NCBI GenBank assembly: GCA_965240325.2
Contig: OZ251238.1
Location: forward strand, 1,178,001-1,242,000
Direction of reading: 5' to 3'
Source: Rebecca billardiae RCC1528
Lineage: Eukaryota > Protista > Haptophyta
Length of the DNA: 64,000 bases
The position numbers and the translations under genes are program-made. Position 1 is the stretch's first letter. Every line of letters begins with the position of its first letter. The notes beneath the pieces were generated by a model, which worked only from the letters and a program-made list of their open reading frames with translations, ran no database searches and was not told where the DNA came from. This document shows positions 23,353-45,910 of the stretch, piece after piece.

Positions 23353-25139
23353 ATGAGGCGTGGACGCCGTGGGAGCACGGGTTGCAGAGGCCTGCTCAGC
23401 CTCGTCGTCGCGCTCGCAAGCATCAGTCTGGCTGCCACGGCCACGCCAAACCCGCCGCCGCCGAGTCCAAGCCCGCCGCCGAGCCCGCCGCCTCCGCCGC
23501 CGAGCCCCAGCCCACCGCCGAGCCCGCCGCCTCCGCCGCCGAGCCCCAGCCCGCCGCCGAGTCCGACGCCGCCTCCCCCGAGCCCGAGCCCGCCACCGCC
23601 CAGCCCGAGCCCGCCACCAAGCCCAGCACCACCGTCGCCAGACCCGAGCCCGCCGCCCAGCCCGCAGCCTCCGCCGCCGAGCCCGAGTCCGCCGCCGTGG
23701 CCGCAGCCGCCCCCGCCCAGCCCGAGCCCGCCGCCCAGCCCGCAGCCTCCGCCGCCGAGCCCGAGTCCGCCGCCGTGGCCGCAGCCGCCCCCGCCCAGCC
23801 CGAGCCCGCCGCCCAGCCCGCAGCCTCCGCCGCCGAGCCCGAGTCCGCCGCCGTGGCCGCAGCCGCCCCCGCCCAGCCCGAGCCCGCCGCCCAGCCCGGA
23901 GCCCCCTTCACCGAGCCGACGCCCGCCACCGAGTCCGGCACCACCTTCGCCAGACCCGAGCCCGCTGCCCAGCCCGCTGCCTCCGCCGCCACGCCCGAGC
24001 CCGCCGCCGAGCCCTCCTCCGCCGCCGCCGAGTCCCAGTCCTCCGCCGCCACCACCACCCTCGCCGCCGCCGAGCATGTCGCCGCCGTTGCCACCGCCGA
24101 GCCCGCCGCCGCCATCGCCGCCGCCACCACCACCGCCGAGCCCGCCACCCTCGCCACCGCCCTCGCCGCCACCGCCGAGCCGTCCGCCGCCACCGCCACC
24201 GGCGCCGCCGCCCTCGCCGCCGCCCTCGCCGGCACCAACGCCGCCGAGCCCGCCGCCGAGCCCGCCGGCGACACCAAGCCCCAGCACGCCGCCGCACCCG
24301 CCGCCGCCTGCGCCGCCGTCGGCGCCGCCCGACCCGAGCCTGCCGCCACGCCCGGCCCCACCACCGGCTGTGCCGCCCTCCCAGCCGCCTCTGCTTCCTC
24401 CGAGCCCCAGCACGCCGCCGCACCCGCCACCGCCGCCGTCCGACCCGCCGTCTCCGCACCCGGGCTCGCCCCCGAGTCCGTCGCCGCCGCCGCCGAGCCC
24501 GAGCCCGCCATCTCGACCGCCACCTCGACCACCGCCGCCGCCGCCCCGCGCGCCGCTGCCCAGCCGGCCACCGCCGCCACCGCCATCAGCACCGCCGCCA
24601 AGTCCAAGCCTGCCGCCGTCGCTGCCGCCGAGCCCGAGCTCGCCACCGCCGCCGAGCCCTGCAGAGCCGCCGCGGCCGCCGCCACCGCCGCTCAGCTCGC
24701 CACCGCCGAGCCCAAGCCCGCCACCGTCACCCTCGCCGCCGCCGCCGAGCCCGAGCCCGCCTCCGCCCCCACCGCCGCCGCCTCCGAGCCCGAGCCCGCC
24801 GCCACCGCCAAGGCCGGCGGCGCCACCGCAGCCCACAACGCTGCCGCCAAGCCCGCCGCCGCCAAGCCCGAGCCCACCACCGCCGCCACCGCCGCCACCG
24901 CCACCACCGCCGAGCCCGAGCCCGCCGCCACCGCCCAGTCCAGCGCCGCCACCGCAGCCGACACCGCCGCCGCCGAGCCCGCCGCCGCCGAGCCCGAGCC
25001 CACCACCGCCGTCCCCGCCGCCGCCGCCGCCGCCGCCGAGCCCAACACCGCCGCCTGAACCGCTTCCGCCGCCTCCTAGCCCGCCACCGCCGAGCCCGAG
25101 CCCGACGCCGCCACCGCCTCGGAGCTCGAGCCTACCACC

Positions 25140-25170
<31 letters not shown>

Positions 25171-28100
25171 AGCCCGAGCCCGCTGCCACCGCCAAGTCCG
25201 GCGCCGCCACCGCCGCCGCCACCGCCGCCGCCAAGCCCGCCGCCGCCAAGCCCGAGCCCACCACCGCCGCCACCGCCGCCACTCCCACCACCGCCGAGCC
25301 CGAGCCCGCCGCCACCGCCAAGGCCGGCGGCGCCACCGCAGCCCACACCGCCTCCGCCGAGCCCGCCGCCGCCAAGCCCGAGCCCACCACCGCCGCCACC
25401 GCCGCCACCGCCACCACCGCCGAGCCCGAGCCCGCCGCCTTCGCCACCTCCGAGCCCGAGCCCGCCACCGCCACAGAGCCCGCAGCCGCCGCCACCGAGC
25501 AGGGTGCCACCGCCTCCGAGCCCGAGCCCGCCGCCTCCGCCAAGCCCAACACCGCCGCCCAGACCGCTGCCACCGCCTCCGAACCCGCCACCGCCGAGCC
25601 CGAGCCCGCCGCCACCGCCAAGTCCGGCGGCGCCACCGCAGCCCACACCGCCTCCGCCGAGCCCGCCGCCGCCAAGCCCGAGCCCGCCACCGCCGTCCCT
25701 GCCGCCGCCGCCGCCGCCGCCGACCCCAAGCCCTCCGCCTTCGCCTCCGCCGAGTCCCAGCCCGCCGCCTCCACCGAGCCCAACACCGCCGCCCGAACCG
25801 CTGCCACCGCCTCCTAGCCCGCCACCGCCAAGCCCGAGCCCTCCGCCCCCCCCACCGCCCCCACCGCCAAGCCCCAGCCCGCCGCCACCGCCAAGCCCGG
25901 CGCCGCCACCCCTGCCGACACCGCCGCCGCCGAGCCCACCACCACCCAGCCCGAGCCCTCCGCCGCATCCACCGCCACCACCGCCAAGCCCGAGCCCGCC
26001 ACCACCGCCCAGTCCGGCGCCGCCACCGCAGCCAACACCGCCGCCGCCAAGCCCGCCACCACCCAGCCCGAGCCCACCACCGCCACCACCGCCACCGCCG
26101 CCGCCGCCTCCGAGCCCGAGCCCGCCGCCACCACCCAGTCCGGCGCCGCCCAGCCCAAGCCAGCCGCCACCGCCACCTCCGAGCCCGAGCCCGCCGCCGC
26201 CGCCCAGCCCGGCGCCACCACCGCTTCCGACGCCGCCGCCGCCGAGCCCGCCACCGCCGAGCCCGAGCCCGCCACCGCCACAGAGCCCGCAGCCGCCGCC
26301 ACCGAGCAGGGTGCCACCGCCTCCGAGCCCGAGCCCGCCACCGCCACAGAGCCCTCAGCCGCCGCCACCGAGCAGGGTGCCACCGCCTCCGAGCCCGAGC
26401 CCTCCGCCGCCGCCCAGTCCGGCGCCGCCACCAATGCCGACGCCGCCACCGCCGAGCCCGCCACCGCCGAGCCCGAGCCCGCCGCCGCCACCACCTCCGA
26501 GCCCGAGCCCGCCACCGCCTCAGAGCCCGCAGCCGCCGCCACCGAGCAGGGTGCCACCGCCTCCGAGCCCGAGCCCGCCACCGCCACAGAGCCCGCAGCC
26601 GCCGCCACCGAGCAGGGTGCCACCGCCTCCGAGCCCGAGCCCGCCGCCACCGCCCAGTCCGGCGCCGCCACCAATGCCGACGCCGCCACCGCCGAGCCCG
26701 CCACCGCCGAGCCCGAGCCCGCCACCGCCACAGAGCCCGCAGCCGCCGCCACCGAGCAAGGTGCCACCGCCTCCGAGCCCGAGCCCGCCGCCACCGCCCA
26801 GTCCGGCGCCGCCACCAATGCCGACGCCGCCACCGCCGAGCCCGCCACCGCCGAGCCCGAGCCCGCCGCCGCCACCGCCTCCGAGCCCGAGCCCGCCACC
26901 GCCACAGAGCCCGCAGCCGCCGCCACCGAGCAGGGTGCCACCGCCTCCGAGCCCGAGCCCGCCACCGCCGCAGAGCCCGCAGCCGCCGCCACCGAGCAGG
27001 GTGCCACCGCCTCCGAGCCCGAGCCCGCCGCCACCGCCCAGTCCGGCGCCGCCACCAATGCCGACGCCGCCACCGCCGAGCCCGCCACCGCCGAGCCCGA
27101 GCCCGCCGCCGCCACCACCTCCGAGCCCGAGCCCGCCACCGCCACAGAGCCCGCAGCCGCCGCCACCGAGCAGGGTGCCACCGCCTCCGAGCCCGAGCCC
27201 GCCACCGCCGCAGAGCCCGCAGCCGCCGCCACCGAGCAGGGTGCCACCGCCTCCGAGCCCGAGCCCGCCACCGCCACAGAGCCCGCAGCCGCCGTCACCG
27301 AGCAGGGTGCCACCGCCTCCGAGCCCGAGCCCTCCACCGCCGCAGAGCCCGCAGCCGCCGCCACCGAGCAGGGTGCCACCGCCTCCGAGCCCGAGCCCGC
27401 CGCCGCCGCCCAGTCCGGCGCCGCCACCAATGCCGACGCCGCCACCGCCGAGCCCGCCACCGCCGAGCCCGAGCCCGCCGCCGCCACCACCTCCGAGCCC
27501 GAGCCCGCCACCGCCACAGAGCCCGCAGCCGCCGCCACCGAGCAGGGTGCCACCGCCTCCGAGCCCGAGCCCGCCACCGCCGCAGAGCCCGCAGCCGCCG
27601 CCACCGAGCAGGGTGCCACCGCCTCCGAGCCCGAGCCCGCCACCGCCACAGAGCCCGCAGCCGCCGCCACCGAGCAGGGTGCCACCGCCTCCGAGCCCGA
27701 GCCCGCCACCGCCACAGAGCCCGCAGCCGCCGCCACCGAGCAGGGTGCCACCGCCTCCGAGCCCGAGCCCGCCGCCTCCACCACCTCCGAGCCCGAGCCC
27801 GCCACCGCCACAGAGCCCGCAGCCGCCGCCACCGAGCAGGGTGCCACCGCCTCCGAGCCCGAGCCCTCCACCGCCACAGAGCCCGCAGCCGCCGCCACCG
27901 AGCAGGGTGCCACCGCCTCCGAGCCCGAGCCCGCCGCCTCCACCACCTCCGAGCCCGAGCCCGCCACCGCCACAGAGCCCGCAGCCGCCGCCACCGAGCA
28001 GGGTGCCACCGCCTCCGAGCCCGAGCCCGCCGCCGCCGCAGAGCCCGCAGCCGCCGCCACCGAGCAGGGTGCCACCGCCCCCGAGCCCGAGCCCGCCACC

Positions 28101-31100
28101 GCCACAGAGCCCTCAGCCGCCGCCACCGAGCAGGGTGCCACCGCCTCCGAGCCCGAGCCCTCCACCGCCGCAGAGCCCGCAGCCGCCGCCACCGAGCAGG
28201 GTGCCACCGCCTCCGAGCCCGAGCCCGCCGCCTCCACCACCTCCGAGCCCGAGCCCGCCACCGCCACAGAGCCCGCAGCCGCCGCCACCGCGCAGGGTGC
28301 CACCGCCTCCGAGCCCGAGCCCGCCACCGCCACAGAGCCCGCAGCCGCCGCCACCGAGCAGGGTGCCACCGCCCCCGAGCCCGAGCCCGCCACCGCCACA
28401 GAGCCCGCAGCCGCCGCCACCGAGCAGGGTGCCACCGCCTCCGAGCCCGAGCCCGCCGCCGCCGCCCAGTCCGGCGCCGCCACCAATGCCGACGCCGCCA
28501 CCGCCGAGCCCGCCACCGCCGAGCCCGAGCCCGCCGCCGCCACCACCTCCGAGCCCGAGCCCGCCACCGCCACAGAGCCCGCAGCCGCCGCCACCGAGCA
28601 GGGTGCCACCGCCTCCGAGCCCGAGCCCGCCACCGCCGCAGAGCCCGCAGCCGCCGCCACCGAGCAGGGTGCCACCGCCTCCGAGCCCGAGCCCGCCGCC
28701 TCCACCGCCCCCGAGCCCGAGCCCGCCACCGCCACAGAGCCCGCAGCCGCCGCCACCGAGCAGGGTGCCACCGCCTCCGAGCCCGAGCCCTCCACCGCCA
28801 CAGAGCCCGCAGCCGCCGCCACCGAGCAGGGTGCCACCGCCTCCGAGCCCGAGCCCGCCGCCTCCACCGCCCCCGAGCCCGAGCCCTCCACCGCCGCAGA
28901 GCCCGCAGCCGCCGCCACCGAGCAGGTTGCCACCGCCCCCGAGCCCGAGCCCGCCACCGCCACAGAGCCCGCAGCCGCCGCCACCGAGCAGGGTGCCACC
29001 GCCTCCGAGCCCGAGCCCGCCGCCGCCGCCCAGTCCGGCGCCGCCACCCATGCCGACGCCGCCACCGCCGAGCCCGCCACCGCCGAGCCCGAGCCCGCCG
29101 CCGCCACCACCTCCGAGCCCGAGCCCGCCACCGCCACAGAGCCCGCAGCCGCCGCCACCGAGCAGGGTGCCACCGCCTCCGAGCCCGAGCCCGCCACCGC
29201 CGCAGAGCCCGCAGCCGCCGCCACCGAGCAGGGTGCCACCGCCTCCGAGCCCGAGCCCGCCGCCTCCACCGCCTCCGAGCCCGAGCCCTCCACCGCCACA
29301 GAGCCCGCAGCCGCCGCCACCGAGCAGGGTGCCACCGCCTCCGAGCCCGAGCCCGCCGCCTCCACCGCCCCCGAGCCCGAGCCCTCCACCGCCGCAGAGC
29401 CCGCAGCCGCCGCCACCGAGCAGGGTGCCACCGCCTCCGAGCCCGAGCCCGCCACCGCCACAGAGCCCGCAGCCGCCGCCACCGAGCAGGGTGCCACCGC
29501 CTCCGAGCCCGAGCCCGCCGCCGCCGCCCAGTCCGGCGCCGCCACCAATGCCGACGCCGCCACCGCCGAGCCCGCCACCGCCGAGCCCGAGCCCGCCGCC
29601 GCCACCACCTCCGAGCCCGAGCCCGCCACCGCCACAGAGCCCGCAGCCGCCGCCACCGAGCAGGGTGCCACCGCCTCCGAGCCCGAGCCCGCCACCGCCA
29701 CAGAGCCCGCAGCCGCCGCCACCGAGCAGGGTGCCACCGCCTCCGAGCCCGAGCCCGCCGCCGCCGCCCAGTCCGGCGCCGCCACCAATGCCGACGCCGC
29801 CACCGCCGAGCCCGCCACCGCCGAGCCCGAGCCCGCCGCCGCCACCACCTCCGAGCCCGAGCCCGCCACCGCCACAGAGCCCGCAGCCGCCGCCACCGAG
29901 CAGGGTGCCACCGCCTCCGAGCCCGAGCCCGCCACCGCCGCAGAGCCCGCAGCCGCCGCCACCGAGCAGGGCGCCACCGCCTCCGAGCCCGAGCCCACCG
30001 CCGCTGCCCAGTCCGGCGCCGCCCAGCCCAAGCCAGCCGCCACCGCCGCCTCCGAGCCCGAGCCCGCCGCCGCCGCCCAGTCCGGCGCCGCCACCTCTGC
30101 CGACGCCGCCGCCACCGAGCCCGCCGCCTCCGAGCCCGAGCCCGCCGCCACCGCCCAGCCCGGCGCCGCCCAGCCCAAGCCAGCCGCCACCGCCGCCTCC
30201 GAGCCCGAGCCCGCCGCCACCGCCCAGTCCGGCGCCGCCACCTCTGCCGACGCCGCCGCCACCGAGCCCGCCGCCTCCGAGCCCGAGCCCGCCGCCACCG
30301 CCCAGTCCGGCGCCGCCCAGCCCAAGCCAGCCGCCACCGCCGCCTCCGAGCCCGAGCCCGCCGCCACCGCCGAGTCCGGCGCCGCCACCTCTGCCGACGC
30401 CGCCGCCACCGAGCCCGCCGCCTCCGAGCCCGAGCCCGCCGCCACCGCCCAGTCCGGCGCCGCCCAGCCCAAGCCAGCCGCCACCGCCGCCTCCGAGCCC
30501 GAGCCCGCCGCCGCCGCCCAGTCCGGCGCCGCCACCTCTGCCGACGCCGCCGCCACCGAGCCCGCCGCCTCCGAGCCCGAGCCCGCCGCCACCGCCCAGT
30601 CCGGCGCCGCCCAGCCCAAGCCAGCCGCCACCGCCGCCTCCGAGCCCGAGCCCGCCGCCGCCGCCCAGTCCGGCGCCGCCACCTCTGCCGACGCCGCCGC
30701 CACCGAGCCCGCCGCCTCCGAGCCCGAGCCCGCCGCCACCGCCCAGTCCGGCGCCGCCCAGCCCAAGCCAGCCGCCACCGCCGCCTCCGAGCCCGAGCCC
30801 GCCGCCGCCGCCCAGTCCGGCGCCGCCACCTCTGCCGACGCCGCCGCCACCGAGCCCGCCGCCTCCGAGCCCGAGCCCGCCGCCACCGCCCAGTCCGGCG
30901 CCGCCCAGCCCAAGCCAGCCGCCACCGCCGCCTCCGAGCCCGAGCCCGCCGCCGCCGCCCAGTCCGGTGCCGCCCAGCCCAAGCCAACCGCCACCGCCGC
31001 CTCCGAGCCCGAGCCCGCCGCCACCGCCCAGTCCGGCGCCGCCCAGCCCAAGCCAACCGCCGCCGCCGCCTCCAAGCCCGAGCCCACTGCCACCGCCCAG

Positions 31101-33302
31101 TCCGGCGCCGCCACCGCTGCCGACGCCGCCGCCACCGAGCCCGTCACCTCCGAGCCCGAGCCCGCCGCCGCCGCCCAGTCCGGCGCCGCCGCCAATGCCG
31201 ACGCCGCCACCGCCGAGCCCGCCACCGCCGAGCCCGAGCCCGCCGCCTCTACCGCCTCCGAGTCCGAGCCCGCCGCCGCCACAGAGCCCGAGCGTGCCGC
31301 CGCCGTCGATGCCCCCGCCACCCAATCCACCTCCGCCGCTCCCAAGCCCGTTGCTTGAACCCTTGCCGCCTCCACCCGCGCCAAGTCCCCCGCCGCCTCC
31401 GCCATCGTCCTCACCGCCTCCTCCGGGCACGGTCGCAGGCGCTCCTCCATCGACCCCGCCGCCGCCGCCGCCACCGCCGCCACCGCCACCGCCGCCTCCG
31501 CCGAGTCCCAGCCCGCCGCCTCCACCGAGCCCAACACCGCCGCCCGAACCGCTTCCGCCGCCTCCTAGCCCGCCGCCGCCAAGCCCGAGCCCTCCGCCCC
31601 CCCCACCGCCCCCACCGCCAAGCCCCAGCCCGCCACCACCGCCCAGTCCGGCGCCGCCACCGCTGCCGACGCCGCCGCCACCGAGCCCACCACCGCCGAG
31701 CCCGAGCCTACCACCGCCACCACCGCCACCACCGCCACCGCCACCGCCGCCTCCGCCGAGCCCGAGCCCGCCACCGCCGCCAAGCCCAGTCCCGCCGCCG
31801 CGACCAATGCCGCCGCCGCCCAGCTCTCCGTCGCCCAGCCCGAGCCCGACGCCGCCACTGCCGTCGTCGCCGCCGCCGCCGAGCCCACCGCCGTCACCTC
31901 GCAGCCCACCGCCATCGCCGCCGCCATCGCCACCGCCATCGCCGCCGCCATCGCCACCGCCATCGCCGCCGCCATCGCCACCGCCATCGCCGCCGCCATC
32001 GCCGCCACCCGCCAGCCCGGGCCTGTCGCCGCAGTCGCCGCAGCGCCCGCCGCCCACTCCGCCGCCTGCCGTCGACAAGGACGAGTCCGGGCCGCTGCGC
32101 CCGTCGGCGCCGCCCAGCAGCCCGCCCTCCGCGCCTCCGCGCCCGCCGTCGTCGCCGCCCTCCCCGCCGCCGCCGCTCCCAGCCTCGATCCGCATGTCGC
32201 AGCCGGTCTTCTATGTGGGGCAGGACCAGTGGGCGAGCTACTGGCTCGAGCCCGCGCTGGTGCACGCGGCCAACTGGGTCGGCGTCTTCCGGCAGGGCGG
32301 GCGCGCGGGCGACCCGCCGCTCACGTGGGCGTGGGCGCCGGCGCAGGCGGGGCAGCTCAACCTCGGCCACAGCGCGGACGAGGTGCGGGCGTACGACGTC
32401 GTGCTCTTCTCGCAGGGCACGCCGGTGTCCCTCGCGCGGACGGTGATGGTCGTGGCGCACGCGCCGCCGCCGCCGTCGGCGCCGCCGTCGGCGCCGCCGC
32501 CGTCGGCGCCGCCGGCGGTGCCGCCGAGCACGCCGCCGCGCCCGCCGCCACCGCCGCCGCCAAGCGCGCCGCCGAGCCGGCCGCCGCCGCCGCCGCCGCC
32601 GCACCGGCCGCCGCCGAGCCGGCCGCCGTCGCCGCCGAGCCCTGCCCCGAGCCCACCGCCGCCGCCGCCGCCGCCGCTCGCGCGCCCGTTCAGCCCGCCG
32701 CCGCCGCCAGCGAGCCCGCCGCCGAGCTCGCCGCCGCCACGCCCGCCGCCGCCGCCGAGCTCGCCGCCCAGCCCGCTGCCGCCACCGCCGCCGCCACCAC
32801 CGAGCCCGCCGCCGAGCCCGCCGCCAAGCCCACCGCCGCCGCCGCCGAGCCCGCCGAGCGCGCCGCCGAGCGCGCCGCCGCCGAGCCCTCCGCGGTCGCC
32901 GCCGCCGAGCACGCCGCCTTCCTCGCCGCCGCCCTCGCCGCCAGGTTCGCCGCCGCCGCCGCCGCCGCCGCCGTCGCCGCCGCCGCCGTCGTCGCCTCCG
33001 CCGTCGCCGCCGCCGCCGTCGTCGCCGCCGCCGAGCCAGCCGCCGCCGTCGCCGAGCCCGCCGCCGCCGAGCCCGTCGTCGCCGCCGCCCAAGCCACCGC
33101 CGAGCGCGCCTCCGCCGCCGCCACCGCGTCCGCCGCCCCCTTCGGCGCCACCGCCCTCGCCGCTTCCGCCGCCGCCGCCCTCGCCGCCGCCGGCCCCGCC
33201 GCCCAGCTCGCCTCCCTCGCCGCCGTCGGCGCCGCCGCCTCGTCCGCCCGCGCCGCCGCCGCCGCCGCCGCCACCGCCGCCGCCGCCTCGGGCGCCGCCG
33301 CC

Positions 33303-33335
<33 letters not shown>

Positions 33336-36300
33336 TCTTAGCCCGCCACCCTCCCCACCCGGTCCGCCGAGCCCGCCGGCGCCGCCGCCGGCGCCTCCGT
33401 CGCGCCCGCCACTGCCGCCGCCGCCGCCTGCACCGCCGAGGGCGCCGCCGAGCGCGCCGCCGCCGAGCGCGCCGCCGCCGCCGCCGGCGCCACCGCCGCT
33501 CCCGCCGCCGCCCTCGCCGCCGCCGGCGCCGCCCTCGCCGCCGCCGGCGCCGCCGAGCCCGCCGAGCCCGCCGCCGAGCCCGCCGCCGCCGAGCCCGTCG
33601 CCGCCGCCGCCCGCGCCGCCGCCCGCGCCGCCGCCGGCCTCGCCGCCGCCGAGCCCGCCGCCATCGCCGCCGTCGCGCCCGCCACCGTCGGCTCCGCCGC
33701 CGCCGCCTCCGTGGCCTCCGGCGAGCCCGCCGCTGCCTCCGCCGCCGCCCGCGCCGCCGAGCGCGCCGCCGAGCGCGCCGCCGCCGAGCGCGCCGCCGCC
33801 GCCGCCCTCGCCGGCGCCGGCGCCGCCGCCGCCCTCGCCGCCGCCGGCGCCGCCCTCGCCGCCGCCGGCGCCGCCGAGCCCGCCGAGCCCGCCGCCGAGC
33901 CCGCCACCGCCGAGCTCGCCGCCGCCGCCGCCGAGCCCGCCGCCGCCGCCGCCGCCGCCGCCGAGCCCGCCGCCGTCGCCGCCGTCGCGCCCGCCGCCGC
34001 CCAGCCCGCCCTCGTCGCCGCCGACCCCGCCGGCTCGCCCGCCCTCGCCGCCGCCGCCCTCGCCGCCGCCGCGCCCGCCGCCGCCTCCGCCCAGCCCGCC
34101 GCCCTCACCAAGCATCTGGTTCGGCCTCCTCCTCGGCGGCACCGTCTCGGAGCTCGAGCCAGCGGCCGCGCGCGTCGAGCTGGAGGCGCGGACTGCCGCG
34201 CTCGCGGGCGTGCCGCCGTGGCACGTGCGCGTGCACGCCGTCCACGCCGCGTCGGTGCGCGCCGTGTTCGAGGCGGTGCCCCGAGACGAGCACGGCGCGC
34301 CGGTCGACGTGCTCGCGGCGCTGTGGCGCCTCTCCCTCCCGCAGCTCTCCGCGCAGCTGGGCGTGGAGGTGCAGGCGCCGCCGATGGCGCTGAGCGCGGG
34401 CTGCACCGCGCCGCTCGCGCCCAACTACGCTTCGGGCGCGGAGGTGGACGACGGCAGCTGCGTGCACGACGCGCCGCGCGCGCCGCCTGCCGCGCCACCG
34501 CCGCGCGCGCCGCCGCCGCCGCCGCCGCCGCCGTCCGCGCCGCCGTCCACACCGCCGCCGTCCGCGCCGCCGTCCGCGCCGCCGCGCGCGCCGCCGTCCG
34601 CGCCGCCGCCGTCCTCGCCGCCGCCCGCCGCGCCGCCGCCGCCGCCGCCCGCGCTGCACGCACCGCAGCTCGAGTGGGCGGGCTTCAACGCTGGCGCGAC
34701 GGCGCTGGTCGTGCGCTTCGACGGCCAGCCGACCGACCGCGCGGGCATGGGCTCGGCGCTCGGCGCGTGCGACGGCGTGCTCGACCCGCCGACGCTCGCG
34801 CTCGTGCGCGGCGGCGCGGACGCGCCGCCGCGCTGCTACTGGCGCGACGACTCGACGCTGGTGGCGCAGCTGAACGCGCGCACGGCGCTGCGCCCGGGCG
34901 CGCGCGTCGGGCTGGTGCCGCGCGCGCTCGCGCCCGCCGCGTGCGCGCCGCCGTGCGCCGACGCCGCGCTGCTCCTCGCCGCGTCGAGCCTGACGATCGA
35001 CGTCGCGTCGCCGTGCGAGGGCGGCGCGTGCCCTGAGCCCGTCGCCGCCATCTCCGCGCCCGCGACGCTCTCCTCGTGCCCCGGCGCGTCGCTCACGCTC
35101 GACGGCTCGGCGTCGCGCGGCGTCGGGATTGCGCCGCTCGCGTACGCGTGGCGGCTGGTCGCGCCCGCGCCGTCGAGCGATGGCGCGGGCCTCGGCGCGC
35201 GTCTCTCCGCGCGGCTGCACTCGCTCCCCGCGGACGCGGCGGTCGTCGCGCTCTCAAGTCTCGAGCTGGACGGCGCGGACGCGGCCGCGGGCGGCGGCGC
35301 GGACGCGGACGCGCAGCCGCTGGTGTTTGAGCTGACGGCCACGTCATTCCTCGGCACGCCGTCCGCGCCGGTTACGTGGGCCGTGTCGCGCGCACACGAC
35401 GCGAGCCCGTCGCTCGCGCTCGTCGGCGCGGCGGTGGTGGACGCGCGCGCGTCACGCCCGCTGCTGCTGGCCGCGCAGGCGTCGCTCGCGCCGTGCTGGC
35501 CGATCTCGCGGCCGGAGATTGCGTTCTCGTGGCGCGTGCTCAGCGTGGCCGAGGTGGAGAGCGACGCGGTGGTGGCGGGCGAGGGCGCGGCCGCGCCGCC
35601 GCCGCCGACCCTCGCGCTGCCCGACCTCTCCGCCGCGAGCCACTCCGACCTGCTGCTGCCTGCGCACGCGCTCAGCGCGGGGCACGCGTACACGCTCGCC
35701 GTGCGCGCGGCGATGGCGGATGACGCCGACGCGGCCGCGGAGGCGCGCGTCGAGGTGCGCGTGCTGCGGCAGCCGCTGCGCGCGGTGATCGCCGGCGGCG
35801 ACCGGCTCGTGCCGAGCGGCGAGCCGCTGCTCGTCGACGCGTCCGGCTCGGCGGACCCCGACTCGCCGCCCGGCGGCGCGGCGGCCGCGTCCGAGCCGCC
35901 GCTGCGCTTTGAGTGGCGCGTCACCCGCGCCGACGGCGGCGCGAGCGTCGTCGCTGTGTCGTCGTACACGCCGTCCCTCGAGCTGCCGGCGGGCGTGCTC
36001 GCGCCCGGCTCGTACGCGCTGCGCCTCCTGCTCTCCAAGCCGGGGCGCGGCGAGGCGGCCGCGTCCATCGCCCTCGAGGTGACGGCGCGCGCCGTGCCCA
36101 CCATCCGGATCGCGCCGTTGCCGCGTTCCAAGGTGAACGCCGACTGGGGCGCGGCGGGCGGCGGCGCGGCGGGGCGCGCGGCGCTCGAGGCGTGGCTCGA
36201 CGACGAGTCGGAGGCGGCGCTCGCGTCGGGCGCGGCGTCGTACGCCTTCGAGTGGTCCGCGCTCGTGCTCGGCGCGGCCGGCTCGCGCGCGCCCGCGCCG

Positions 36301-38367
36301 CTGGAGCTGCACGACGACGAGCGCGTGACGACGACGGGCGCGCGCGGGCGAACGCTCGCGTTCCGCCGCGGCGCGCTCGCGCCGGGCGCGTTGTACAGCT
36401 TCGAGCTGCGCGTGACGGGCGGCGCGGAGGTGGCGTTCGCACAGGTGAGCGTGGCGGTCAACCGGCCGCCGTTCGGCGGGCGGCTGCGCGTCTCGCCGCC
36501 GTCTGGCGGCGCCTCGCTGCACACGACGTTTGTGCTGCGCGCGCGCGGCTGGGCGGACGACGACGCGGACGACTTGCCGCTGCGGTACAGCTTCGAGCTA
36601 CGTGAGACGGTGTCGCGCGGCGCGCGCGAGGTCGGCGTGCCGCTCGGCGCGCTGCGCCGCGCGCCGTACGCGCACGCCGTGCTGCCCGCGGGCAACCGCA
36701 CCGCCGCCGTCCTCGTGCTCGACGCGCTCGGCGCCGCCGCGAGCGCTCTCGCGCACGTCGAGGTCGGCGCGGCCGAGCCGGCGCTCGAGGGCGGCGGCGG
36801 CGGCGGCGGCGCGGGCGCGCACAGCGCTGCGGCGACGGCGGGCGCGGCGGCGCGCGCGCTCGAGACCGCCATCGAGCGCGCGCGCCTCGCCGTCGCCACC
36901 GGCGCGAGCGAGCTCGCCCTTCAGCTCGTACGCGCGGGCGCGGACGCACTCGGCGCGCTCGCGGCGCTCGACGCCGCCGCGGCCGCCGACGCGGCCGCGA
37001 CGCTGCTCGAGCTGAGCGAGGCGGCGCGCGGCGCGCGCGCGTCGACGGCGGAGGGGCGCGCGCAGGCGGCGGGCGTGCTCGCCGCCGTCCTCGGCGCCGC
37101 CTCGCCGCACGCGCTGCCCGCGCGCGCGCGCGCGAGCGCGCTCGCCCAGCTCGCCGCCATCACCGACGCTGCGCGCGCGCCCGGCGGCGGCGGCGTCGAC
37201 GGCTCCGTCGGCACGCTGCTGCTCGAGGCGCTGGACGCGCTGCTGCTCGCCGCGCCGCTGCGCGGGCTGGGCGAGGCGGAGGCGCGCGAGCTCGGCCTCG
37301 GCGTGAGCGCCGCCGTGGACGGGCTCTCTCGCGCGCTGCTCAGCGGCACGCTCGCGGGCGAGCGCGCGCCCGCGCTCGTCGGCGACGCGCTCGCGCTCGC
37401 GCCGAGCCGCGAGCGCGCGGACGCGCTGCGCAACTCCAGCCTCGGCGTGCCGGGCGGCTCGGCGGCGCTCGGCTTGCCGCACGGCGTGTTCGCGGGGCTG
37501 CGCGGCGCCGACGGCGCGTCCGGCGCGGGCGCGCCGCCGTACAGCCTCGGCGCGCCCGTCGACGCCGTGCTCTACACGCTCCGCGCCAACGTGCACGACG
37601 ACCCGGCCAACGGCACCAACTGGACGGGGCTCGGCGCGGGGCTGCGCTCAAGGCTCTTCTCCGCGACGCTGTACGACACGCGCAGCGGCGGCGCGCTGCC
37701 GCTGGCCGGGCTCGCGCAGCCGCTCGAGCTGCGCCTGCCGCTGCTGCCCGCCGCGCACGGCGGCGGCGCGGACGCGGGCTCAGCGCTCGCGTGCGCGTGG
37801 TGGGCGGACGCCGAGCGCGCGTGGCTCGGCGACGGCTGCGTGGCCGTCGGCGTGGTGGCGGCGGCGGACGCGGCGGGCGCGGGGTCGGACGGCGCGGAGG
37901 GCGGCGCGCTGGTGTGTGCGTGCACCCACCTCACCGACTTCGCCGCCGTCTCCGCGCCCTCCTCCGCCGCCGAGCTCGACGCCGACGCCGCCACCTTCAC
38001 CGTCAACACGCTCTCGCTCGACCAGCTCACGCTCGCCGCGTCGGTGGACGCGCACGAGCTCAACCCGACGATTGTGTGGCTGGTGGTTGCGCTCACGGCG
38101 GGGTGCGCGCTGAGCGTGGGCTGCGCGGCGTGGCGCGACGAGCGGGACGCGCGCAAGCGCAGGCTCCGCCTGCTCGCCGTGCTCGACGCCGCCGACGCGG
38201 GCGTGAAGAAGGCGAAGGCGCAGCCGCAGCAGCGCCAGCCGCGCCACTGGCCGGCGCCGCACGGCGCGCAGGCGGTGCAGCCGACGCGCGCAGCAACACG
38301 CCCAGCCGCCGCCGCGGCCGCGGCCAAGGGCGGTGCCGAGGTGGGCTCTGGCGCCGAGGGCGCCGAG

Positions 38368-38398
<31 letters not shown>

Positions 38399-41300
38399 TG
38401 CGGCCGCGGCCCGACGGCTTCGCCGACCGGCTCGAGCTCGCGCTCGACGACGCGGAGGACTGGGCGATCCGAGCGCGGCACGAGGCCGCGCGCACGATGC
38501 AACGGCACGTGCGCGGCCGGCGCGCGCGCTCGGTGATCGCTGCGCTCCGGCCGCGCCGCGCGGGCGCGGACTACGAGCGCGACCACTTCTTGACGTCGCT
38601 CGTGCGCCGCGTGGGCGCCAAGATCGGCAGCGACCACTCGGTGCTCGGGCTGCTGCTCGCGGACGCGGAGGACTCGAAGCGCGCCGAGCTCGCGCAGATC
38701 TTCTGGAACGTCGCGATGCTCGGCCTCGTGATCACGTGCATGCTCTACGCGCCGCTCGACTCGACGCCTGGCGCGCCGGGCTCGGGCGTGCAGGACGCGG
38801 ACGCGGCGGCGGAGGCGGCGGGCACGCTCAACCTGACGCACGCGGTGATGACGGCGCTCCTCACCGCCGCGCTCACCGCGCCCGCGCTCGCGCTCTTCAA
38901 CGCCATCTACCGCTTTGGCTACGGCCGGCGCGCCGCGCCGCTCTCGAAGCGCGTGCACGCCGCATTCCTGCGCGCCGAGCTGGCCGCGCGCGTGCAGCAG
39001 CAGTCGCCGTTCGCGCAGACGGTGCGCTCGCGGCTCGAGGACGGCGGCGCCTCCGTCGTCGCGAGCCGAAGCCCCTCGCGCCGCGGCTCGCTCGGCAAGC
39101 CGAGCCCGCTCGGCTCCACGCCCACGCCCGCCAAGCCGGGCGCCGGGCCGGGCGGCTTCAGGCGCCGGCCGAGCCGGCTTGACGGCGACGGCGCCGCGGC
39201 CGCGCGCTCCGCCGGCGTCTCGACCAACTCGTCGCTCGACTCGTCGTTCGTGGACGCGGGGGGCGCGCGGGGCAGGCCGCCGGCGCTGCGGCGCTCGCAG
39301 AGCGCGTCCGGCGTCTTTGGCGCGCAGCGCCTCTCGCCGCGCGCGCTCTTCGGCGGCGGCGGCGGCAGCGGCGCGGCGTCGCCGCGCAACGCGACGATCG
39401 GCCCTGCGCCCGCGCCAGACGCGCCGGTGGCCCCCGAGCACGACGCGGCGCGCGCGGCGCTCAAGCGGCCGCCGCCGCCCGGCGCGCCCGCGGCGCTCTC
39501 GCCCGAGGACGGCGCGCGCTCGTTCGGGCGCACGCGCCCGCTGCGCACGGGCGGCGCGCACTGGCCCGCGGGCGGCGCGGGCGCGGAGGCGGGCGCGGGC
39601 GCGGGCGCGGGCGCCTCGCCGCGCGAGCGCTCGCCACCAAACCCGCTCCGCTCGCCGCGCGAGCGCTCGCCAAACCCGTTCGGCTCGCCGCGCGGGCCGG
39701 GCTCGGCGGGCAGCCGCGGCAGCAGCGCGGCCTCGCCCGCATCGCTCGGCGCGCGGCGCGGCCGGCGGCGCAGCAGCAGCACCGGCGCCATCCGCCCGCC
39801 CAGGCCAGGCGAGTCGTCGTCGCCCGGCGGCGCGCGGCCGGGAAGCTCGCGCCCGGGGCTGCTGCCGCCGCTGCCGCTCGGCCGGACGGCGCCACTCGCC
39901 ACCGCCGCGGCGATTGGCCCGGGCGACGAGGCGTGCGCCTCCGCGCCCGGCGGCGAGGCGCCGCCCCTCCCGCGCCGCCCGCCGCCGCTCGGCAGCCACG
40001 GCCGCACGGCCGCCGTGCCCACGCCCGCCGCGCAGGCCGGGCCGCTCGCGGTGCGCGGCCCGGGCGGCGGCGTGGGCTCGCCCACACCGTCGGCCGGCGG
40101 CGGCACGCCGCGCTCGGCCGGCGGCGGCACGCCGCGCTCGGCGGGCAGCACCCCGCGCGGCGGCACCTTCCGACGCGCCGCCGGCGCCGCCGGCGCCGCC
40201 GGCGCCGCGAGCGGCGGGCCGCTCAGCCCGGCGCGCAACGCGCCCGTCTCGCCTCTCGAGATGAGCGCGCCGCCGGCCGCGCCGGCCGCGGCGGCGCCGC
40301 CGTTTGCCGACGTGCTCGTCCACCCGGAGGAGGGGCGCGGCGCGGCGGGCGCGCCCGCGAGCAGCGGCGGCGGGCGCACGCCCCGCTGGGGCCGGGCGCG
40401 CCCGCCCGCCGACGGCGCGCCCGCCGCGGAGGGCTCGGAGGCGTGGCGCGCCGCGCGCGCGCTCGAGATCGCAGACGGGTGGCGCGCGCGCCCGAGCCCG
40501 GTCTCGCCCGACGCGCGCGCGCCGACGCAGCCGCCGCATCCGCACCCGCCGCCGTCGCCGCCGCACCCGCACCCGCCGCCGAGCCGGCCGCCGCCGCCCG
40601 CGACGCCGCCGCCGGAGTACAGCGCCGTGCCCGCGCCGGACGAGCGGACGCTCGCCTCGCCGCGCCGCCCGCCGCCCGTCTCGCCCGAGCCGGGCGCGGA
40701 GGCGGGCGCGGACGCGGGCTCGGCCTTGGACTCGGAGGCGGACTCGGCGCCGTCCGAGCCGTCGTCGGGCCGCGCCTCGCCCGTGGCGGCGCGCGCGCGG
40801 CCGGGGCCGAGCACGCCCGCGCCGCCCCGCACGCCGCACGCCGCACGCACCGAGCTCGACGCCGCGCACGACGCCACGCTCCTCGACGGCGAGACCCTCG
40901 CGCTGCTGGGCGCAAAGTTCGACGAGCACGACGCGGACCGCTCGGGCGCGCTCGACGTCGCCGAGTTCGCCCAGCTGCTGCACGACCTGGGCTTCCGGCT
41001 GCGCCGGCCGCGCGTGCGCGCGCTCGTCGCCGAGATTGACGCCGACCGCGACGGCCGCGTCACCTTTGTCGAGCTCGCCATCTGGTACGACAAGATGGTC
41101 GCGGCCGAGGTGGCGCGCGCGGGCCGCTGCGCGTACGGGCCGTGCGCGTGGGGCGCGCGCGCGCTGCGCTGCTGCGTGCCCTCGGCGCGCGTGCGGCTCG
41201 GCCTCGCGTGGGCGGCGATGTGGACCATCTTCGCGGCGCTCGCCTACCTCGCCCTCTCGTACGCGCTCGTCTTCGGCGAGCGGCAGACGCGCTACCTCCT

Positions 41301-41496
41301 GCTCTCGTGGTGCTTCGGCGAGGCGCAGTCGCTGACGGTCGAAGAGCCGATCATCCTCGCCCTCGCCGTGCTGCTGCCTGTGCTGGTGGACCGCGCGCTC
41401 TCGCAGGGGGGCGCGAGCGGCGAGGCGGCGAACGAGCTGCTCGCGACGAGCGTCGGCGCGGCCGTGCACGTGCTCCAGAGCATCGGCGCGGGCTGA
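23353..41496 (+). CDS. Giant polycystin-1 (PKD1)-like receptor, ~6047 aa, single exon: signal peptide, Pro/Ser shaft, Ig/SKICH-like and SEA-like modules, REJ, GAIN/GPS, 5 TM, IQ motif, EF-hand pair
   Basis: 18-kb stop-free frame; signal LLSLVVALASISLAATA. REJ-type motifs LTLDGSAS, LLVDASGSADPD, VNRPPFGGRLRVSP and GWADDDADDLPLRYSF. GPS CAWW...W...GC...CACTHL/TDFA (37921-37941). IQ AARTMQRHVRGRRAR. EF loops DADRSGALDVAE and DADRDGRVTFVE. Other in-frame ATGs at 23290 and 23326. Confidence 0.9.
23443..34110 (+). repeat. Coding Pro/Ser repeat region with 66-bp (PPPPQSPQPPPPSRVPPPPSPS), 240-bp higher-order and 147-bp units
   Basis: 66-bp period (e.g. 26305 to 26371); 240-bp period (26761 to 27001, 29461 to 29701); 147-bp period at 30007, 30154, 30301, 30448, 30595, 30742 and 30889. 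Interrupted by a globular module at about 32180-32460. Confidence 0.95.
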
Positions 41497-42186: not shown

Positions 42187-42346
42187 ATGTCCGCCTTCGG
42201 CCGGGGCTCGCGTCGCGGCGGCGGTGGCGGCAGCAGTGCGTTCGGAGGCGGCGGCGGCGCGCGCGGTGGACGAGGCAGCAGCGCGTTCGGTAGCGGTGGT
42301 GGCGGCGGCGGCGGCAGCTTTGGCGGTGGCGGCGGCAGCGCCTTTG

Positions 42347-42381
<35 letters not shown>

Positions 42382-42506: not shown

Positions 42507-42543
<37 letters not shown>

Positions 42544-43496: not shown

Positions 43497-43536
<40 letters not shown>

Positions 43537-45879: not shown

Positions 45880-45910
<31 letters not shown>

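What the first reader, a model, noticed from the sequence alone, without database searches (positions are those of the whole stretch)
23353..41496. Giant channel-less polycystin-1-like receptor with its own IQ motif and EF-hand pair
Seen: one 18-kb exon encodes signal peptide, ~3,460 aa of Pro/Ser shaft, REJ, GAIN with an intact HL/T site (CTHL/TDFAAV), TM1, IQ, TM2, TM3, a ~700-aa disordered loop ending in two canonical EF-hands, TM4, TM5, then stop. The TM4-5 text (YALVFG...LLLSW...QSLTVEEP) and the His-Ser segment before TM2 resemble the first five TMs of PKD1. Established: PKD1 has REJ-GAIN-TM1-PLAT-TM2-5, then a TOP domain and a 6-TM channel part, and GPS autoproteolysis exposes a stalk peptide. 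Here PLAT appears replaced by an IQ-bearing loop and the channel half is absent. Predicted topology puts IQ and EF-hands both in the cytosol. Inference: a self-cleaving mechano- or contact sensor with an intramolecular Ca2+ switch, possibly working in trans with a separate PKD2/TRP subunit.
Basis: partly seen in the sequence, partly recalled or inferred. Interest (0 to 1): 0.85.

Follow-up and report, generated by a model that had tools for sequence, protein, structure and literature searches.

The report
Headless giant half-polycystin-1 surface filament
A very GC-rich haptophyte-like alga encodes, in one 18-kb open reading frame, a roughly one-micrometre proline-serine rod anchored in the membrane by the self-cleaving front half of a polycystin-1-type receptor. 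That base has a calmodulin-type IQ motif and its own calcium-binding EF-hand pair in place of the usual PLAT domain and ion-channel half, so it belongs to an undescribed family, and its function is untested.

Summary
One stop-free frame (Met 23353 to stop 41494-41496, 6,047 aa) encodes:
- a signal peptide;
- 3,506 residues of Pro/Ser rod (about 1.1 µm if extended as a polyproline II helix), broken by two small globular islands;
- a REJ domain (Pfam E 4e-37);
- a GAIN domain (AF2 pLDDT 86; Foldseek hit to BAI3 GAIN, E 1e-10) with an intact HL/T site;
- five TM helices.

The predicted five-helix bundle has human polycystin-1 TM1-TM5 as its best PDB match (8z6b_A, Z 16.8, 200 residues, 3.1 Å). 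An IQ motif sits in the TM1-TM2 loop and a canonical EF-hand pair in the TM3-TM4 loop. No PLAT, TOP or channel part was found here or in about 15 relatives.

Relatives include a transcript-derived ORF from MMETSP and annotated Diacronema lutheri and Pavlovales sp. CCMP2436 proteins. All complete ones end 40-60 residues after TM5.

The likeness to PKD1 is at fold and domain-order level only; sequence profiles do not hit PKD1. The proposed calcium self-switch, force sensing and pairing with a PKD2/TRP subunit remain untested inference.

This scan has already noted many paralogues on other DNA of the same genome. This copy differs by having no head domain. I found no paper describing the family. 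No RNA run was listed.

The parts
23353..23445 (+). Signal peptide (aa 1-31). In-frame ATGs at 23290 and 23326 are alternative starts.
   Evidence: Hydropathy peak at aa 13-31. Sequence read. The AT-richer stretch 22780-23080 upstream looks intergenic.
23446..32187 (+). Rod 1: 2,914 aa, 68.6% Pro and 17.9% Ser. Built from SPPPP/SPSPPPP-type tandem units with DNA periods of 66, 147 and 240 bp.
   Evidence: Composition and motif counts. Tandem Repeats Finder, e.g. 147-bp unit x10 at 89% matches.
32188..32502 (+). Globular island of 105 aa inside the rod (aa 2946-3050). No family assigned.
   Evidence: Composition changes sharply. No Pfam hit at E<=1.
32503..34110 (+). Rod 2: 536 aa, 70% Pro.
   Evidence: repeats.
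34111..34488 (+). 126-aa module (aa 3587-3712) weakly like the eight repeated modules of the neighbouring giant gene. It ends in a Cys...DDGSC motif and is followed by a 56-aa Pro linker (34489-34656).
   Evidence: BLASTP E 0.001 to modules in 55500-58679. Sequence.
34657..36783 (+). REJ module (aa 3769-4477; Pfam REJ on aa 4055-4477).
   Evidence: PF02010 E 4e-37, 128 bits. Conserved with P0001-P0003.
36811..37956 (+). GAIN domain: helical subdomain A (aa 4487-4662) and beta subdomain B (aa 4680-4868).
   Evidence: AF2 mean pLDDT 86.1, pTM 0.81. Foldseek: BAI3 GAIN 4dlo_A E 1.1e-10, BAI2, CELSR1, latrophilin, GPR126, CD97, GPR56.
37927..37935 (+). GPS autoproteolysis triad H4859-L4860/T4861. 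Cleavage is predicted between L and T.
   Evidence: Sequence. H, L and T are invariant in 20 family members. The strand after the site, aa 4862-4868, is the last beta strand of the model.
37933..38070 (+). Stalk or putative tethered peptide and linker (aa 4861-4906: TDFAAVSAPSS...VNT...).
   Evidence: Conserved block HLTDFAG-VPTS-...-VNT in the family.
38071..38139 (+). TM1 (aa 4907-4929), continuing as a long cytosolic helix.
   Evidence: Hydropathy 2.19. AF2 pLDDT about 96.
38497..38538 (+). IQ motif MQRHVRGRRARSVI (aa 5049-5062) in the TM1-TM2 loop, where PC1 has PLAT.
   Evidence: PF00612: 15.9 bits here, 24.2 and 22.3 in paralogues. Family profile hits myosin-5a IQ 2ix7_C at E 0.005. Conservation.
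38632..38757 (+). Conserved pre-TM2 helix (DHSVLGL...KRAEL; His and Arg invariant) and TM2 (aa 5113-5135).
   Evidence: Invariant H and R across 20 sequences. Blocks. AF2 pLDDT 85-95.
38836..38910 (+). TM3 (aa 5162-5186), preceded by a conserved NLTH sequon in the short outer loop.
38920..40887 (+). Disordered cytosolic loop of 656 aa (Ala/Pro/Gly/Arg/Ser-rich).
   Evidence: AF2 pLDDT about 30. GC3 0.96-0.97 in frame, so it is coding rather than an intron. Composition.
40909..41085 (+). EF-hand pair (aa 5853-5911), with loops D5860-E5871 and D5896-E5907.
   Evidence: PF13499 E 5e-11. phmmer hits RSP7, calmodulin and centrin. VIA: Ca-calmodulin lobe 5hit_A, Z 11.9, rmsd 1.3 Å over 77 residues.
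41197..41274 (+). TM4 (aa 5949-5974).
   Evidence: AF2 pLDDT 94-97.
41341..41403 (+). TM5 (aa 5997-6017), opening with the invariant EEP/EP motif.
   Evidence: AF2 pLDDT about 85.
41404..41496 (+). Short C-terminal tail helix and stop codon TGA (41494-41496).
   Evidence: Relatives end at the same point.

Best explanation
Shown by sequence and predicted fold: this is an intact gene for a membrane-anchored surface filament. About 1.1 µm of extensin-like Pro/Ser rod starts directly after the signal peptide, with no head domain. The rod stands on a base homologous to the front half of polycystin-1: REJ, a GAIN domain with an HL/T autoproteolysis site, and the five-helix TM1-TM5 bundle. The PLAT domain of PC1 is replaced by a helical loop with an IQ motif. 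The TM3-TM4 loop ends in a canonical EF-hand pair. The TOP/six-TM channel half is absent. It belongs to a conserved family found in Pavlovales haptophytes.

Inferred: the GAIN domain cleaves itself, so the rod is held non-covalently on the stalk plus 5-TM fragment. Pull or contact on the rod strains or removes it and frees the stalk peptide (TDFAAVSAPSS...), which changes the 5-TM bundle. On the cytosolic side the EF pair binds Ca2+. The IQ helix binds either this EF pair in cis or free calmodulin, so the output or anchoring of the base depends on Ca2+.

The confidence given covers the whole statement. For the identity and architecture alone I would say about 0.9. For the force/contact sensor with a Ca2+ switch, about 0.35.
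For: Architecture:
- REJ, Pfam E 4e-37.
- GAIN fold: AF2 pLDDT 86, Foldseek E 1e-10 to BAI3 GAIN.
- HLT invariant in 20 relatives.
- 5-TM bundle: top PDB match is PC1 residues 3064-3610 (8z6b_A, Z 16.8, rmsd 3.1 Å, 200 aligned). Every other row in the top 50 is an EF-hand match at Z <= 11.1, so no other membrane bundle scores above 8.2.
- IQ. EF pair with canonical loops.
- No PLAT or PKD_channel in this protein or in relatives.

End of the gene:
- All complete relatives end 40-60 aa after TM5, including MMETSP Transcript_30791.
- A separate + strand ORF starts at 42187.

Coding evidence: GC3 and stop statistics.

Signalling reading:
- In wider REJ-GPS relatives the cytosolic parts carry other signalling domains: RhoGAP in P0062 and TRAF zinc fingers in P0034.
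- IQ and EF occur together in the EF-bearing clade, and both are missing in the P0017/18/19/22 clade.

Precedents:
- Stalk-mediated activation of PC1 and adhesion GPCRs (PMC9672506).
- Calmodulin binding to the PC1 tail (PMC4999191).
- A hydroxyproline-rich rod on a polycystin-type membrane domain in Chlamydomonas MST3 (PMC11015965).
Against: - No expression data: no RNA run was listed.
- Cleavage, Ca2+ binding and IQ binding are not tested.
- The IQ here is below Pfam's cut-off and has Met at the first position. AF2 kinks the helix inside the motif.
- I could not read model coordinates, so no IQ-EF contact was examined.
- The co-occurrence of IQ and EF rests on a single clade split and is therefore weak evidence.
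- Z 16.8 for an all-helical bundle is above, but not far above, the level such models can reach by chance (note). No sequence profile links the TM part to PC1.
- The long tandem repeats could be mis-assembled in length.
- Whether this alga hydroxylates and glycosylates such rods is unknown.
Confidence: 0.6

Rival explanations
1. It is mainly a structural surface or flagellar hair, or a coat or adhesion fibre. The polycystin-1-like base serves as a membrane anchor and GAIN cleavage as a release point for shedding. The IQ/EF modules govern trafficking or attachment to the cytoskeleton, as PLAT governs PC1 trafficking, rather than transmitting a signal.
For: - 58% of the protein is rod and there is no ligand-binding head.
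- The next gene but one downstream (44103..58682) is another giant Pro-rich protein with a plain single TM anchor.
- PPII rods spanning hundreds of nanometres form the Chlamydomonas mastigoneme (PMC11015965).
- PLAT in PC1 regulates membrane trafficking (PMC9672506).
- The rod repeats are young and labile.
Against: - An anchor would not need a conserved REJ-GAIN-5TM unit with an invariant HLT, a conserved stalk, an invariant pre-TM2 His/Arg and an EEP motif.
- Relatives carry RhoGAP or TRAF domains on the cytosolic side, which points to signalling.
Confidence: 0.25
2. One reading: the 5-TM base is an accessory subunit that gates a separate PKD2/TRP-type channel in trans, so together they rebuild a PC1/PC2-like complex.
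For: - PC1 works with PKD2.
- MST3 joins PKD2 and SIP in Chlamydomonas (PMC11015965).
- Earlier scan notes report a TRP channel with EF-hands just upstream of this window and a TRPP-type channel elsewhere in the genome. I did not check either.
Against: - The missing S1-S6 half is the part of PC1 that occupies a subunit position beside PKD2 (my own knowledge of the PC1/PC2 structure, not tested here).
- MST3 uses a PKD2-like fold, not the TM1-5 fold.
- No partner was identified or modelled here.
- Whole clades of relatives lack any channel part.
Confidence: 0.1
3. It is a gene-model or assembly artefact. The rod and the receptor are two genes, or a repeat array has collapsed or expanded, and the single ORF is an accident of a stop-poor, 80% GC sequence.
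For: - Very GC-rich repeats give long ORFs in several frames, e.g. 3,028 aa at 23360..32446 in another frame and 1,907 aa on the minus strand.
- None of the 150 best public relatives carries a rod of 200 aa or more, except P0146.
- No RNA evidence.
Against: - Signal peptide, both islands, REJ, GAIN, TMs and EF are all in one frame without a stop.
- The only signal peptide lies before the rod.
- The non-repetitive part alone is far beyond chance.
- Relatives carry other ectodomains, such as TIG arrays, in the same position in front of REJ.
Confidence: 0.05

Closest known systems
Polycystin-1 / PKD1 family (human PKD1, PKDREJ, PKD1L1-3)
   Same: REJ domain, a GAIN domain with an HL/T GPS site and a stalk, then a five-helix TM1-TM5 bundle in the same order. 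The AF2 model superposes on PC1 residues 3064-3610 (Z 16.8). Both have a long cytosolic TM3-TM4 loop. PC1 is also Ca2+/calmodulin-regulated, through its C-tail (PMC4999191).
   Different: No PLAT in the TM1-TM2 loop; an IQ motif sits there instead. No TOP domain, no six-TM channel-like half and no C-terminal coiled coil. An EF-hand pair is built into the TM3-TM4 loop. The ectodomain is a Pro/Ser rod, not LRR, PKD repeats or a C-type lectin. No sequence-level match in the TM part.
Sea-urchin SpREJ proteins with few TMs (SpREJ1, 8, 9: one TM; SpREJ2: two; SpREJ7: six) (PMC1934368)
   Same: REJ plus GPS proteins without the cation-channel half. They are surface proteins of flagellated cells.
   Different: They are animal proteins with lectin domains and often PLAT, with no IQ or EF modules and no Pro rod. 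A defined 5-TM unit has not been described for them.
Chlamydomonas MST3, axial protein of the mastigoneme (PMC11015965)
   Same: A giant hydroxyproline-rich PPII rod, hundreds of nanometres long, tethered to the membrane by a polycystin-type transmembrane domain. A mechanosensory role is suggested.
   Different: MST3 carries the other half: an incomplete PKD2-like channel fold completed by SIP and paired with PKD2. It has no REJ, GAIN, IQ or EF. It is a green alga protein, not a haptophyte one.
Adhesion GPCRs
   Same: GAIN fold (Foldseek E 1e-10 to 1e-4), HL/T autoproteolysis and a tethered stalk peptide.
   Different: Seven-TM bundle and G-protein coupling. Here there are five TMs of the PC1 type.
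Ectocarpus Esi0130_0068 (PMC4700764)
   Same: An algal REJ plus GPS membrane protein of the same general kind, with 6-7 predicted TMs and about 450 aa of membrane part. It is expressed only in male gametes.
   Different: A brown alga protein of 1,427 aa with no rod. No IQ or EF is reported. Its relation to this family was not tested here.
Unnamed Pavlovales family: Diacronema lutheri KFE25_002410 and KFE25_001592; Pavlovales sp. CCMP2436 KAJ1633484.1 and KAJ1635852.1; MMETSP Transcript_30791
   Same: The same base: REJ-GAIN(HLT)-TM1-IQ-preTM2 motif-TM2-TM3-loop-EF pair-TM4-TM5-short tail.
   Different: 25-38% identity only. They are about 2,000-3,500 aa with TIG or other ectodomains and no micrometre rod. 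They are annotated only as 'REJ domain-containing', 'EF-hand domain-containing' or 'hypothetical'.

Membership tests
PKD1 (polycystin-1) family in the strict sense | REJ domain | tested here: met
   PF02010 E 4e-37, 128 bits against a cut-off of 25.
PKD1 (polycystin-1) family in the strict sense | GAIN domain with a GPS HL/T site just before TM1 | tested here: met
   AF2 plus Foldseek to solved GAIN domains. HLT present and invariant in relatives. Pfam GPS is 18.9 bits here, below the 22.5 cut-off. Cleavage itself was not tested.
PKD1 (polycystin-1) family in the strict sense | PLAT/LH2 domain after TM1 | tested here: not met
   No PF01477 hit at E<=1. AF2 shows only helices in the TM1-TM2 loop. 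Also absent in relatives.
PKD1 (polycystin-1) family in the strict sense | Eleven TMs, the last six forming a PKD2-like channel domain with TOP | tested here: not met
   Five TMs and then a stop. No PKD_channel hit. The next + strand ORFs are unrelated genes. Relatives end at the same place.
PKD1 (polycystin-1) family in the strict sense | TM1-TM5 bundle of PC1 | tested here: met
   VIA-align top hit is 8z6b_A residues 3064-3610: Z 16.8, rmsd 3.1 Å, 200 aligned, 16% identity. This is fold level only; sequence profiles give no hit.
Pavlovales REJ-GAIN-5TM-IQ-EF family (undescribed) | Collinear REJ, GAIN/HLT, TM1, IQ, EHxxLG pre-TM2 motif, TM2, TM3, EF pair, TM4, TM5 (EEP), short tail | tested here: met
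   Alignment blocks with 19 relatives. The profile search gave 182 proteins at E<=1e-30.
Adhesion GPCR | Seven-TM secretin-like bundle after GAIN | tested here: not met
   Five TMs. No 7-TM hit in Pfam or in the fold searches.
IQ calmodulin-binding motif | [ILV]QxxxRGxxx[RK] helix scoring above Pfam PF00612's cut-off | tested here: inconclusive
   15.9 bits against 20.3 here, with Met at position 1. Paralogues at the same position score 24.2 and 22.3. Profile hit to the myosin-5a IQ at E 0.005. Binding was not tested.
Canonical EF-hand pair | Two 12-residue loops with Asp/Asn/Ser at positions 1, 3 and 5 and Glu at position 12 | tested here: met
   DADRSGALDVAE and DADRDGRVTFVE. PF13499 E 5e-11. 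Z 11.9 to a Ca-calmodulin lobe. Ca2+ binding was not tested.
Hydroxyproline-rich glycoprotein (extensin-like) rod | Ser-Pro(3-5) repeats that are hydroxylated and O-glycosylated and form a PPII helix | not testable with these tools
   The sequence motif is present: 146 SPPPP and 106 SPSPPPP. Modification and conformation are unknown.

The most novel reading that the evidence does not exclude
The front half of polycystin-1 (REJ-GAIN-TM1-5) is an autonomous, ancient receptor module that works without any channel half. In haptophytes it has become the base of micrometre-long, self-cleaving surface filaments. Its state is read out inside the cell by a built-in EF-hand pair clamping its own IQ helix, a self-contained mechano-to-calcium switch. 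Animal PC1 would then be a fusion of such a module with a PKD2-like channel.
Probability: 0.2. Interest if true: 0.85.

Novelty: new variant of a known kind. Interest (0 to 1): 0.6.

Why it matters
What the first five helices, GAIN domain and stalk of polycystin-1 do on their own is an open question in polycystic kidney disease research, because in animals they are always fused to the channel-like half.

A natural family in which this half stands alone offers a simpler system to ask what the PC1 front half signals. Here PLAT is swapped for an IQ motif and a calcium sensor is built in.

The micrometre-scale Pro/Ser rod also links it to the question of how protist surface and flagellar hairs are anchored and whether they sense force, as proposed for the Chlamydomonas mastigoneme-PKD2 complex.

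This remains a prediction without expression or biochemical data, and this gene is only one of many paralogues in the genome.

Tried and rejected
Searches that gave nothing useful:
- RNA evidence: the look-up of sequencing runs on 37900-42400 listed no run. Splicing, transcript ends and expression stay untested.
- Sequence link to PKD1: phmmer of REJ-GAIN-TM1-3 against PDB sequences found nothing at E<=1. The profile of four relatives gave only IQ and weak GPS hits. The profile of TM4-TM5 gave nothing at E<=10.
- Foldseek on the anchor model found only EF-hand proteins. The pdb_via second look likewise.
- ESM Atlas by fold was swamped by EF-hands, and by features gave no usable hit.
- The first profile job failed because the profile had 1,207 positions, over the limit of 1,200. 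It was redone with a trimmed alignment.

Ideas considered and rejected:
- Downstream channel exons. The 690 bp after the stop are lower-GC and non-coding-like. The next + strand ORF (42187..43923) is an FG/GG-rich protein with its own ATG, and the ORF after it (44103..58682) is a different giant Pro-rich protein with a single TM.
- An upstream head-domain exon. The 211-aa ORF at 22049..22684 has no Pfam hit and an implausible sequence. The stretch before the start is AT-richer, and the next gene upstream is an EamA transporter on the minus strand.
- Adhesion-GPCR membership. Rejected because there are five TMs, not seven.

Steps I could not do:
- I could not read AF2 coordinates or PAE, so the cis IQ-EF contact could not be examined.
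- The two contig look-ups gave no taxon names.

Full report
**1. Is the ORF real?**

The window is extremely GC-rich (0.60-0.88 in 2-kb windows). Such sequence is poor in stop codons, so long ORFs are not evidence of a gene by themselves. Several overlapping ORFs of 1,000-3,000 codons lie in other frames of the repeat region.

The ORF 23080..41496 (+) is nevertheless far beyond chance:
- In its non-repetitive 3' part (34111-41493, 2,461 codons), base composition predicts a stop every ~126 codons. The probability of no stop is about 3e-9.
- The other five frames carry 6-25 stops.
- 200 shuffles gave at most 997 stop-free codons.
- Third-position GC is 0.95-0.98 throughout aa 3600-6047, against 0.59-0.64 in the flanks.

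That GC3 signal continues through the 656-aa disordered loop. The loop is therefore coding in this frame rather than an unnoticed intron.

In-frame ATGs at 23290 and 23326 are equally possible starts. The AT-richer stretch 22780-23080 and an EamA-type transporter gene on the minus strand (19780..21462) bound the gene upstream.

**2. The ectodomain**

After the signal peptide come 2,914 residues that are 68.6% Pro and 17.9% Ser. The order then runs:
- a 105-aa globular island (aa 2946-3050) with no Pfam match;
- a second rod of 536 residues;
- a 126-aa module;
- a 56-aa Pro linker.

The 126-aa module weakly resembles the eight repeated modules of the neighbouring giant gene (BLASTP E 0.001).

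Rod residues total 3,506. At 0.31 nm per residue for a polyproline II helix, that is about 1.1 µm. The rise per residue is established knowledge; the conformation here is inferred.

The DNA is built of tandem units with periods of 66, 147 and 240 bp, up to 89% identical. The rod length is therefore evolutionarily labile and is also the part most exposed to assembly error.

Unlike the paralogues noted elsewhere in this scan, there is no head domain. The rod starts directly after the signal peptide.

**3. REJ and GAIN**

Pfam finds REJ at E 4e-37. The GPS motif scores just under Pfam's cut-off here, but the site C-T-H-L/T-D-F-A-A-V is canonical. H, L and T are invariant in an alignment of 20 relatives.

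I folded aa 4470-4933 with a 46-sequence alignment. The model has mean pLDDT 86.1 and pTM 0.81, with a helical subdomain followed by a beta sandwich. The strand right after the HL/T site is the last strand of that sandwich.

Foldseek matches solved GAIN domains: BAI3 4dlo_A (E 1.1e-10), BAI2, CELSR1, latrophilin-1, GPR126, CD97, GPR56 and GPR110. The GAIN claim is therefore confirmed at fold level. Cleavage itself is inferred.

**4. The membrane part**

Hydropathy gives five TM helices after the GPS, at about aa 4907, 5113, 5164, 5949 and 5997.

I folded aa 4850-6047 with a 20-sequence family alignment and no templates:

| Region | pLDDT |
|---|---|
| Long loops | about 30 (disordered) |
| TM1 | 96 |
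| TM2 | 85-95 |
| TM3 | 87-91 |
| EF pair | 88-96 |
| TM4 | 94-97 |
| TM5 | about 85 |

Foldseek saw only the EF-hands. An exhaustive VIA-align pass over 48,161 PDB representatives put one chain on top: 8z6b_A, polycystin-1 in the PC1/PC2 complex. The match has Z 16.8, rmsd 3.1 Å, 200 aligned residues and 16% identity. Model residues 37-1155 align to PC1 residues 3064-3610, the span that by my own knowledge holds PC1 TM1-TM5.

All other rows in the top 50 are EF-hand matches (Z <= 11.1). No other membrane bundle reaches Z 8.2.

The tool warns that helical models can reach Z ~14 by chance, so Z alone is not proof. Three things make homology to the PC1 front half the best reading:
- the hit is unique;
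- it is collinear over all five helices;
- it follows REJ-GAIN-GPS, exactly as in PC1.

The likeness is not detectable by sequence. phmmer and two family profiles find no PKD1 chain in the PDB.

**5. What replaces PLAT and the channel**

No PLAT, PKD_channel or other TM family is hit. The TM1-TM2 loop is predicted as helices only. In it lies MQRHVRGRRARSVI (aa 5049-5062):
- Pfam's IQ model gives 15.9 bits here, below the 20.3 cut-off.
- Paralogues P0003 and P0012 score 24.2 and 22.3 bits at the aligned position.
- The best PDB hit of the four-sequence family profile is the IQ region of myosin-5a (2ix7_C, E 0.005), followed by myosin-VIIa IQ5.

The TM3-TM4 loop ends in an EF-hand pair (PF13499, E 5e-11). 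Both loops are canonical: DADRSGALDVAE and DADRDGRVTFVE. The pair superposes on a Ca2+-calmodulin lobe (5hit_A, Z 11.9, 1.3 Å over 77 residues).

Several features place both modules in the cytosol:
- the signal peptide and the GAIN domain are outside;
- basic residues follow TM1 and TM3 and precede TM4;
- the bundle is equivalent to PC1 TM1-TM5.

**6. Is the stop real?**

The TGA at 41494 is followed by about 690 bp of lower-GC sequence. After that come an FG/GG-rich ORF with its own ATG (42187..43923, no Pfam hit) and a different giant Pro-rich protein with one TM (44103..58682). I found no channel exons.

Independently, every complete relative ends 40-60 residues after TM5 with a similar tail helix. 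These include P0004, an ORF from an MMETSP transcript whose 90%-identity cluster holds Pavlovales sp. CCMP2436 KAJ1633484.1. This is transcript-level support in a relative, not in this organism. No RNA run was listed for this sequence.

**7. The family**

A profile of REJ to TM3 searched against 1.84 billion representatives found 4,178 proteins at E <= 1e-3 and 182 at E <= 1e-30.

About 15 of the best hits share the whole base, including the IQ, the invariant His/Arg pre-TM2 helix, the EF pair and the EEP start of TM5. The named ones are:
- Diacronema lutheri KFE25_002410 and KFE25_001592;
- Pavlovales sp. CCMP2436 KAJ1633484.1 and KAJ1635852.1.

All are annotated only as hypothetical, 'REJ domain-containing' or 'EF-hand domain-containing'. 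They are 25-38% identical to this protein, so they are paralogue-level relatives. The window's own protein is not among the representatives.

A sister group (P0017, P0018, P0019, P0022) has GPS plus five TMs but neither IQ nor EF.

Among the top 150, crude TM counts after the GPS are mostly 3-6 and never 11. Wider relatives include an oomycete protein (Lagenidium giganteum DAZ95472.1). Some carry RhoGAP or TRAF zinc fingers in their cytosolic parts, and again none has PLAT or a channel domain.

None of the 150 has a Pro rod of 200 aa or more, except P0146. The micrometre rods are therefore either specific to this genome or lost from public gene models.

**8. Comparison with what is known**

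- Channel-less REJ proteins exist in sea urchins: SpREJ1, 8 and 9 have one TM, SpREJ2 two and SpREJ7 six (PMC1934368).
- An algal REJ+GPS protein with 6-7 predicted TMs is known from Ectocarpus male gametes (PMC4700764).
- PC1's C-tail binds Ca2+/calmodulin through a myosin-like motif (PMC4999191).
- In Chlamydomonas, the giant hydroxyproline-rich rod protein MST3 is anchored by a PKD2-like domain completed by SIP and paired with PKD2 (PMC11015965).

Each element therefore has a precedent. The combination does not, in any paper I could find: the PC1 front half standing alone as a five-TM unit, IQ in place of PLAT, an EF pair built into the TM3-TM4 loop, and a micrometre rod.

By my own knowledge, untested here, cis EF-hand-like/IQ contacts are known in the C-terminal domains of voltage-gated sodium and calcium channels. 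That makes a self-clamp plausible but does not show it.

**9. Earlier notes of this scan**

Look-ups show that the scan has already noted many paralogues on other pieces of the same genome. They carry LRR, lectin, RCC1 or integrin-like heads on similar rods. One (s1-336755) has the same IQ plus EF reading. These notes agree with what I found independently, but they are not independent evidence.

They also mention TRP/TRPP channels in the genome, which I did not check.

**10. Mechanism and verdict**

Shown: the architecture listed above.

Inferred: GAIN self-cleavage, a filament held non-covalently on a stalk plus 5-TM fragment, stalk exposure under load, and a Ca2+-dependent IQ/EF readout.

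Two points favour a signalling base over a passive anchor:
- the stalk, the pre-TM2 helix and the TM5 motif are conserved;
- relatives carry signalling domains at the cytosolic positions.

The headless, rod-dominated build keeps a structural-hair reading alive. Pairing with a PKD2-type channel is the least supported idea, because the half of PC1 that sits among PKD2 subunits is the half that is missing.

I rate this a new variant of a known kind (the polycystin-1/REJ superfamily). It is interesting but rests on prediction alone.

Noticed in passing
window 44103-58682 (+): A second giant ORF of 4,859 codons. It has a signal peptide, a ~200-aa Cys-rich head, about 3,300 aa of very regular SPPP rod, eight ~130-aa repeated modules separated by Pro linkers, one C-terminal TM helix and a short tail. 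It is a different kind of giant Pro-rich membrane protein, lying in tandem orientation with the polycystin-like gene.
   Followed up: partly
window 42187-43923 (+): A 578-aa ORF rich in GG/FG repeats (SAFGGGGG...) around a short non-repetitive core. No Pfam hit. It may be an FG-nucleoporin-like protein. It separates the two giant genes.
   Followed up: partly
window 19780-21462 (-): An EamA-like transporter (PF00892, E 5.7e-18) on the opposite strand. It is the upstream neighbour, with a ~1.9-kb divergent intergenic region.
   Followed up: partly
window 32188-32502 (aa 2946-3050): A 105-aa globular island in the middle of the rod with no Pfam match. The stretch ANWVGVFRQGG is, from memory, reminiscent of SKICH-type beta sandwiches. 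This was not tested.
   Followed up: no
window 34390-34470 (about aa 3685-3710): A short Cys-bounded motif, C-TAPLAPNYASGAEVDDGS-C, after the 126-aa module. It looks like a small disulfide-closed loop motif. It was not searched.
   Followed up: no
window 23446-32187 versus 34111-41493: Third-position GC is only 0.69-0.80 in the rod but 0.95-0.98 in the rest of the gene. The Pro codons of the rod mix CCA, CCG and CCT, against the genome's strong GC3 bias.
   Followed up: partly
P0062 (Logan) and P0034 (JGI), relatives found: REJ-GPS multi-TM relatives carry a RhoGAP domain (P0062) or five TRAF-type zinc fingers (P0034) in their cytosolic parts. This suggests a modular protist receptor scaffold with interchangeable cytosolic effectors.
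   Followed up: partly
Family alignment A4, C-terminal tails: Many relatives end in Cys-rich tails (e.g. ...VCGACSS, ...FACCCS, ...GCMSC), which could be palmitoylation sites. The window's copy has no Cys in its tail.
   Followed up: no
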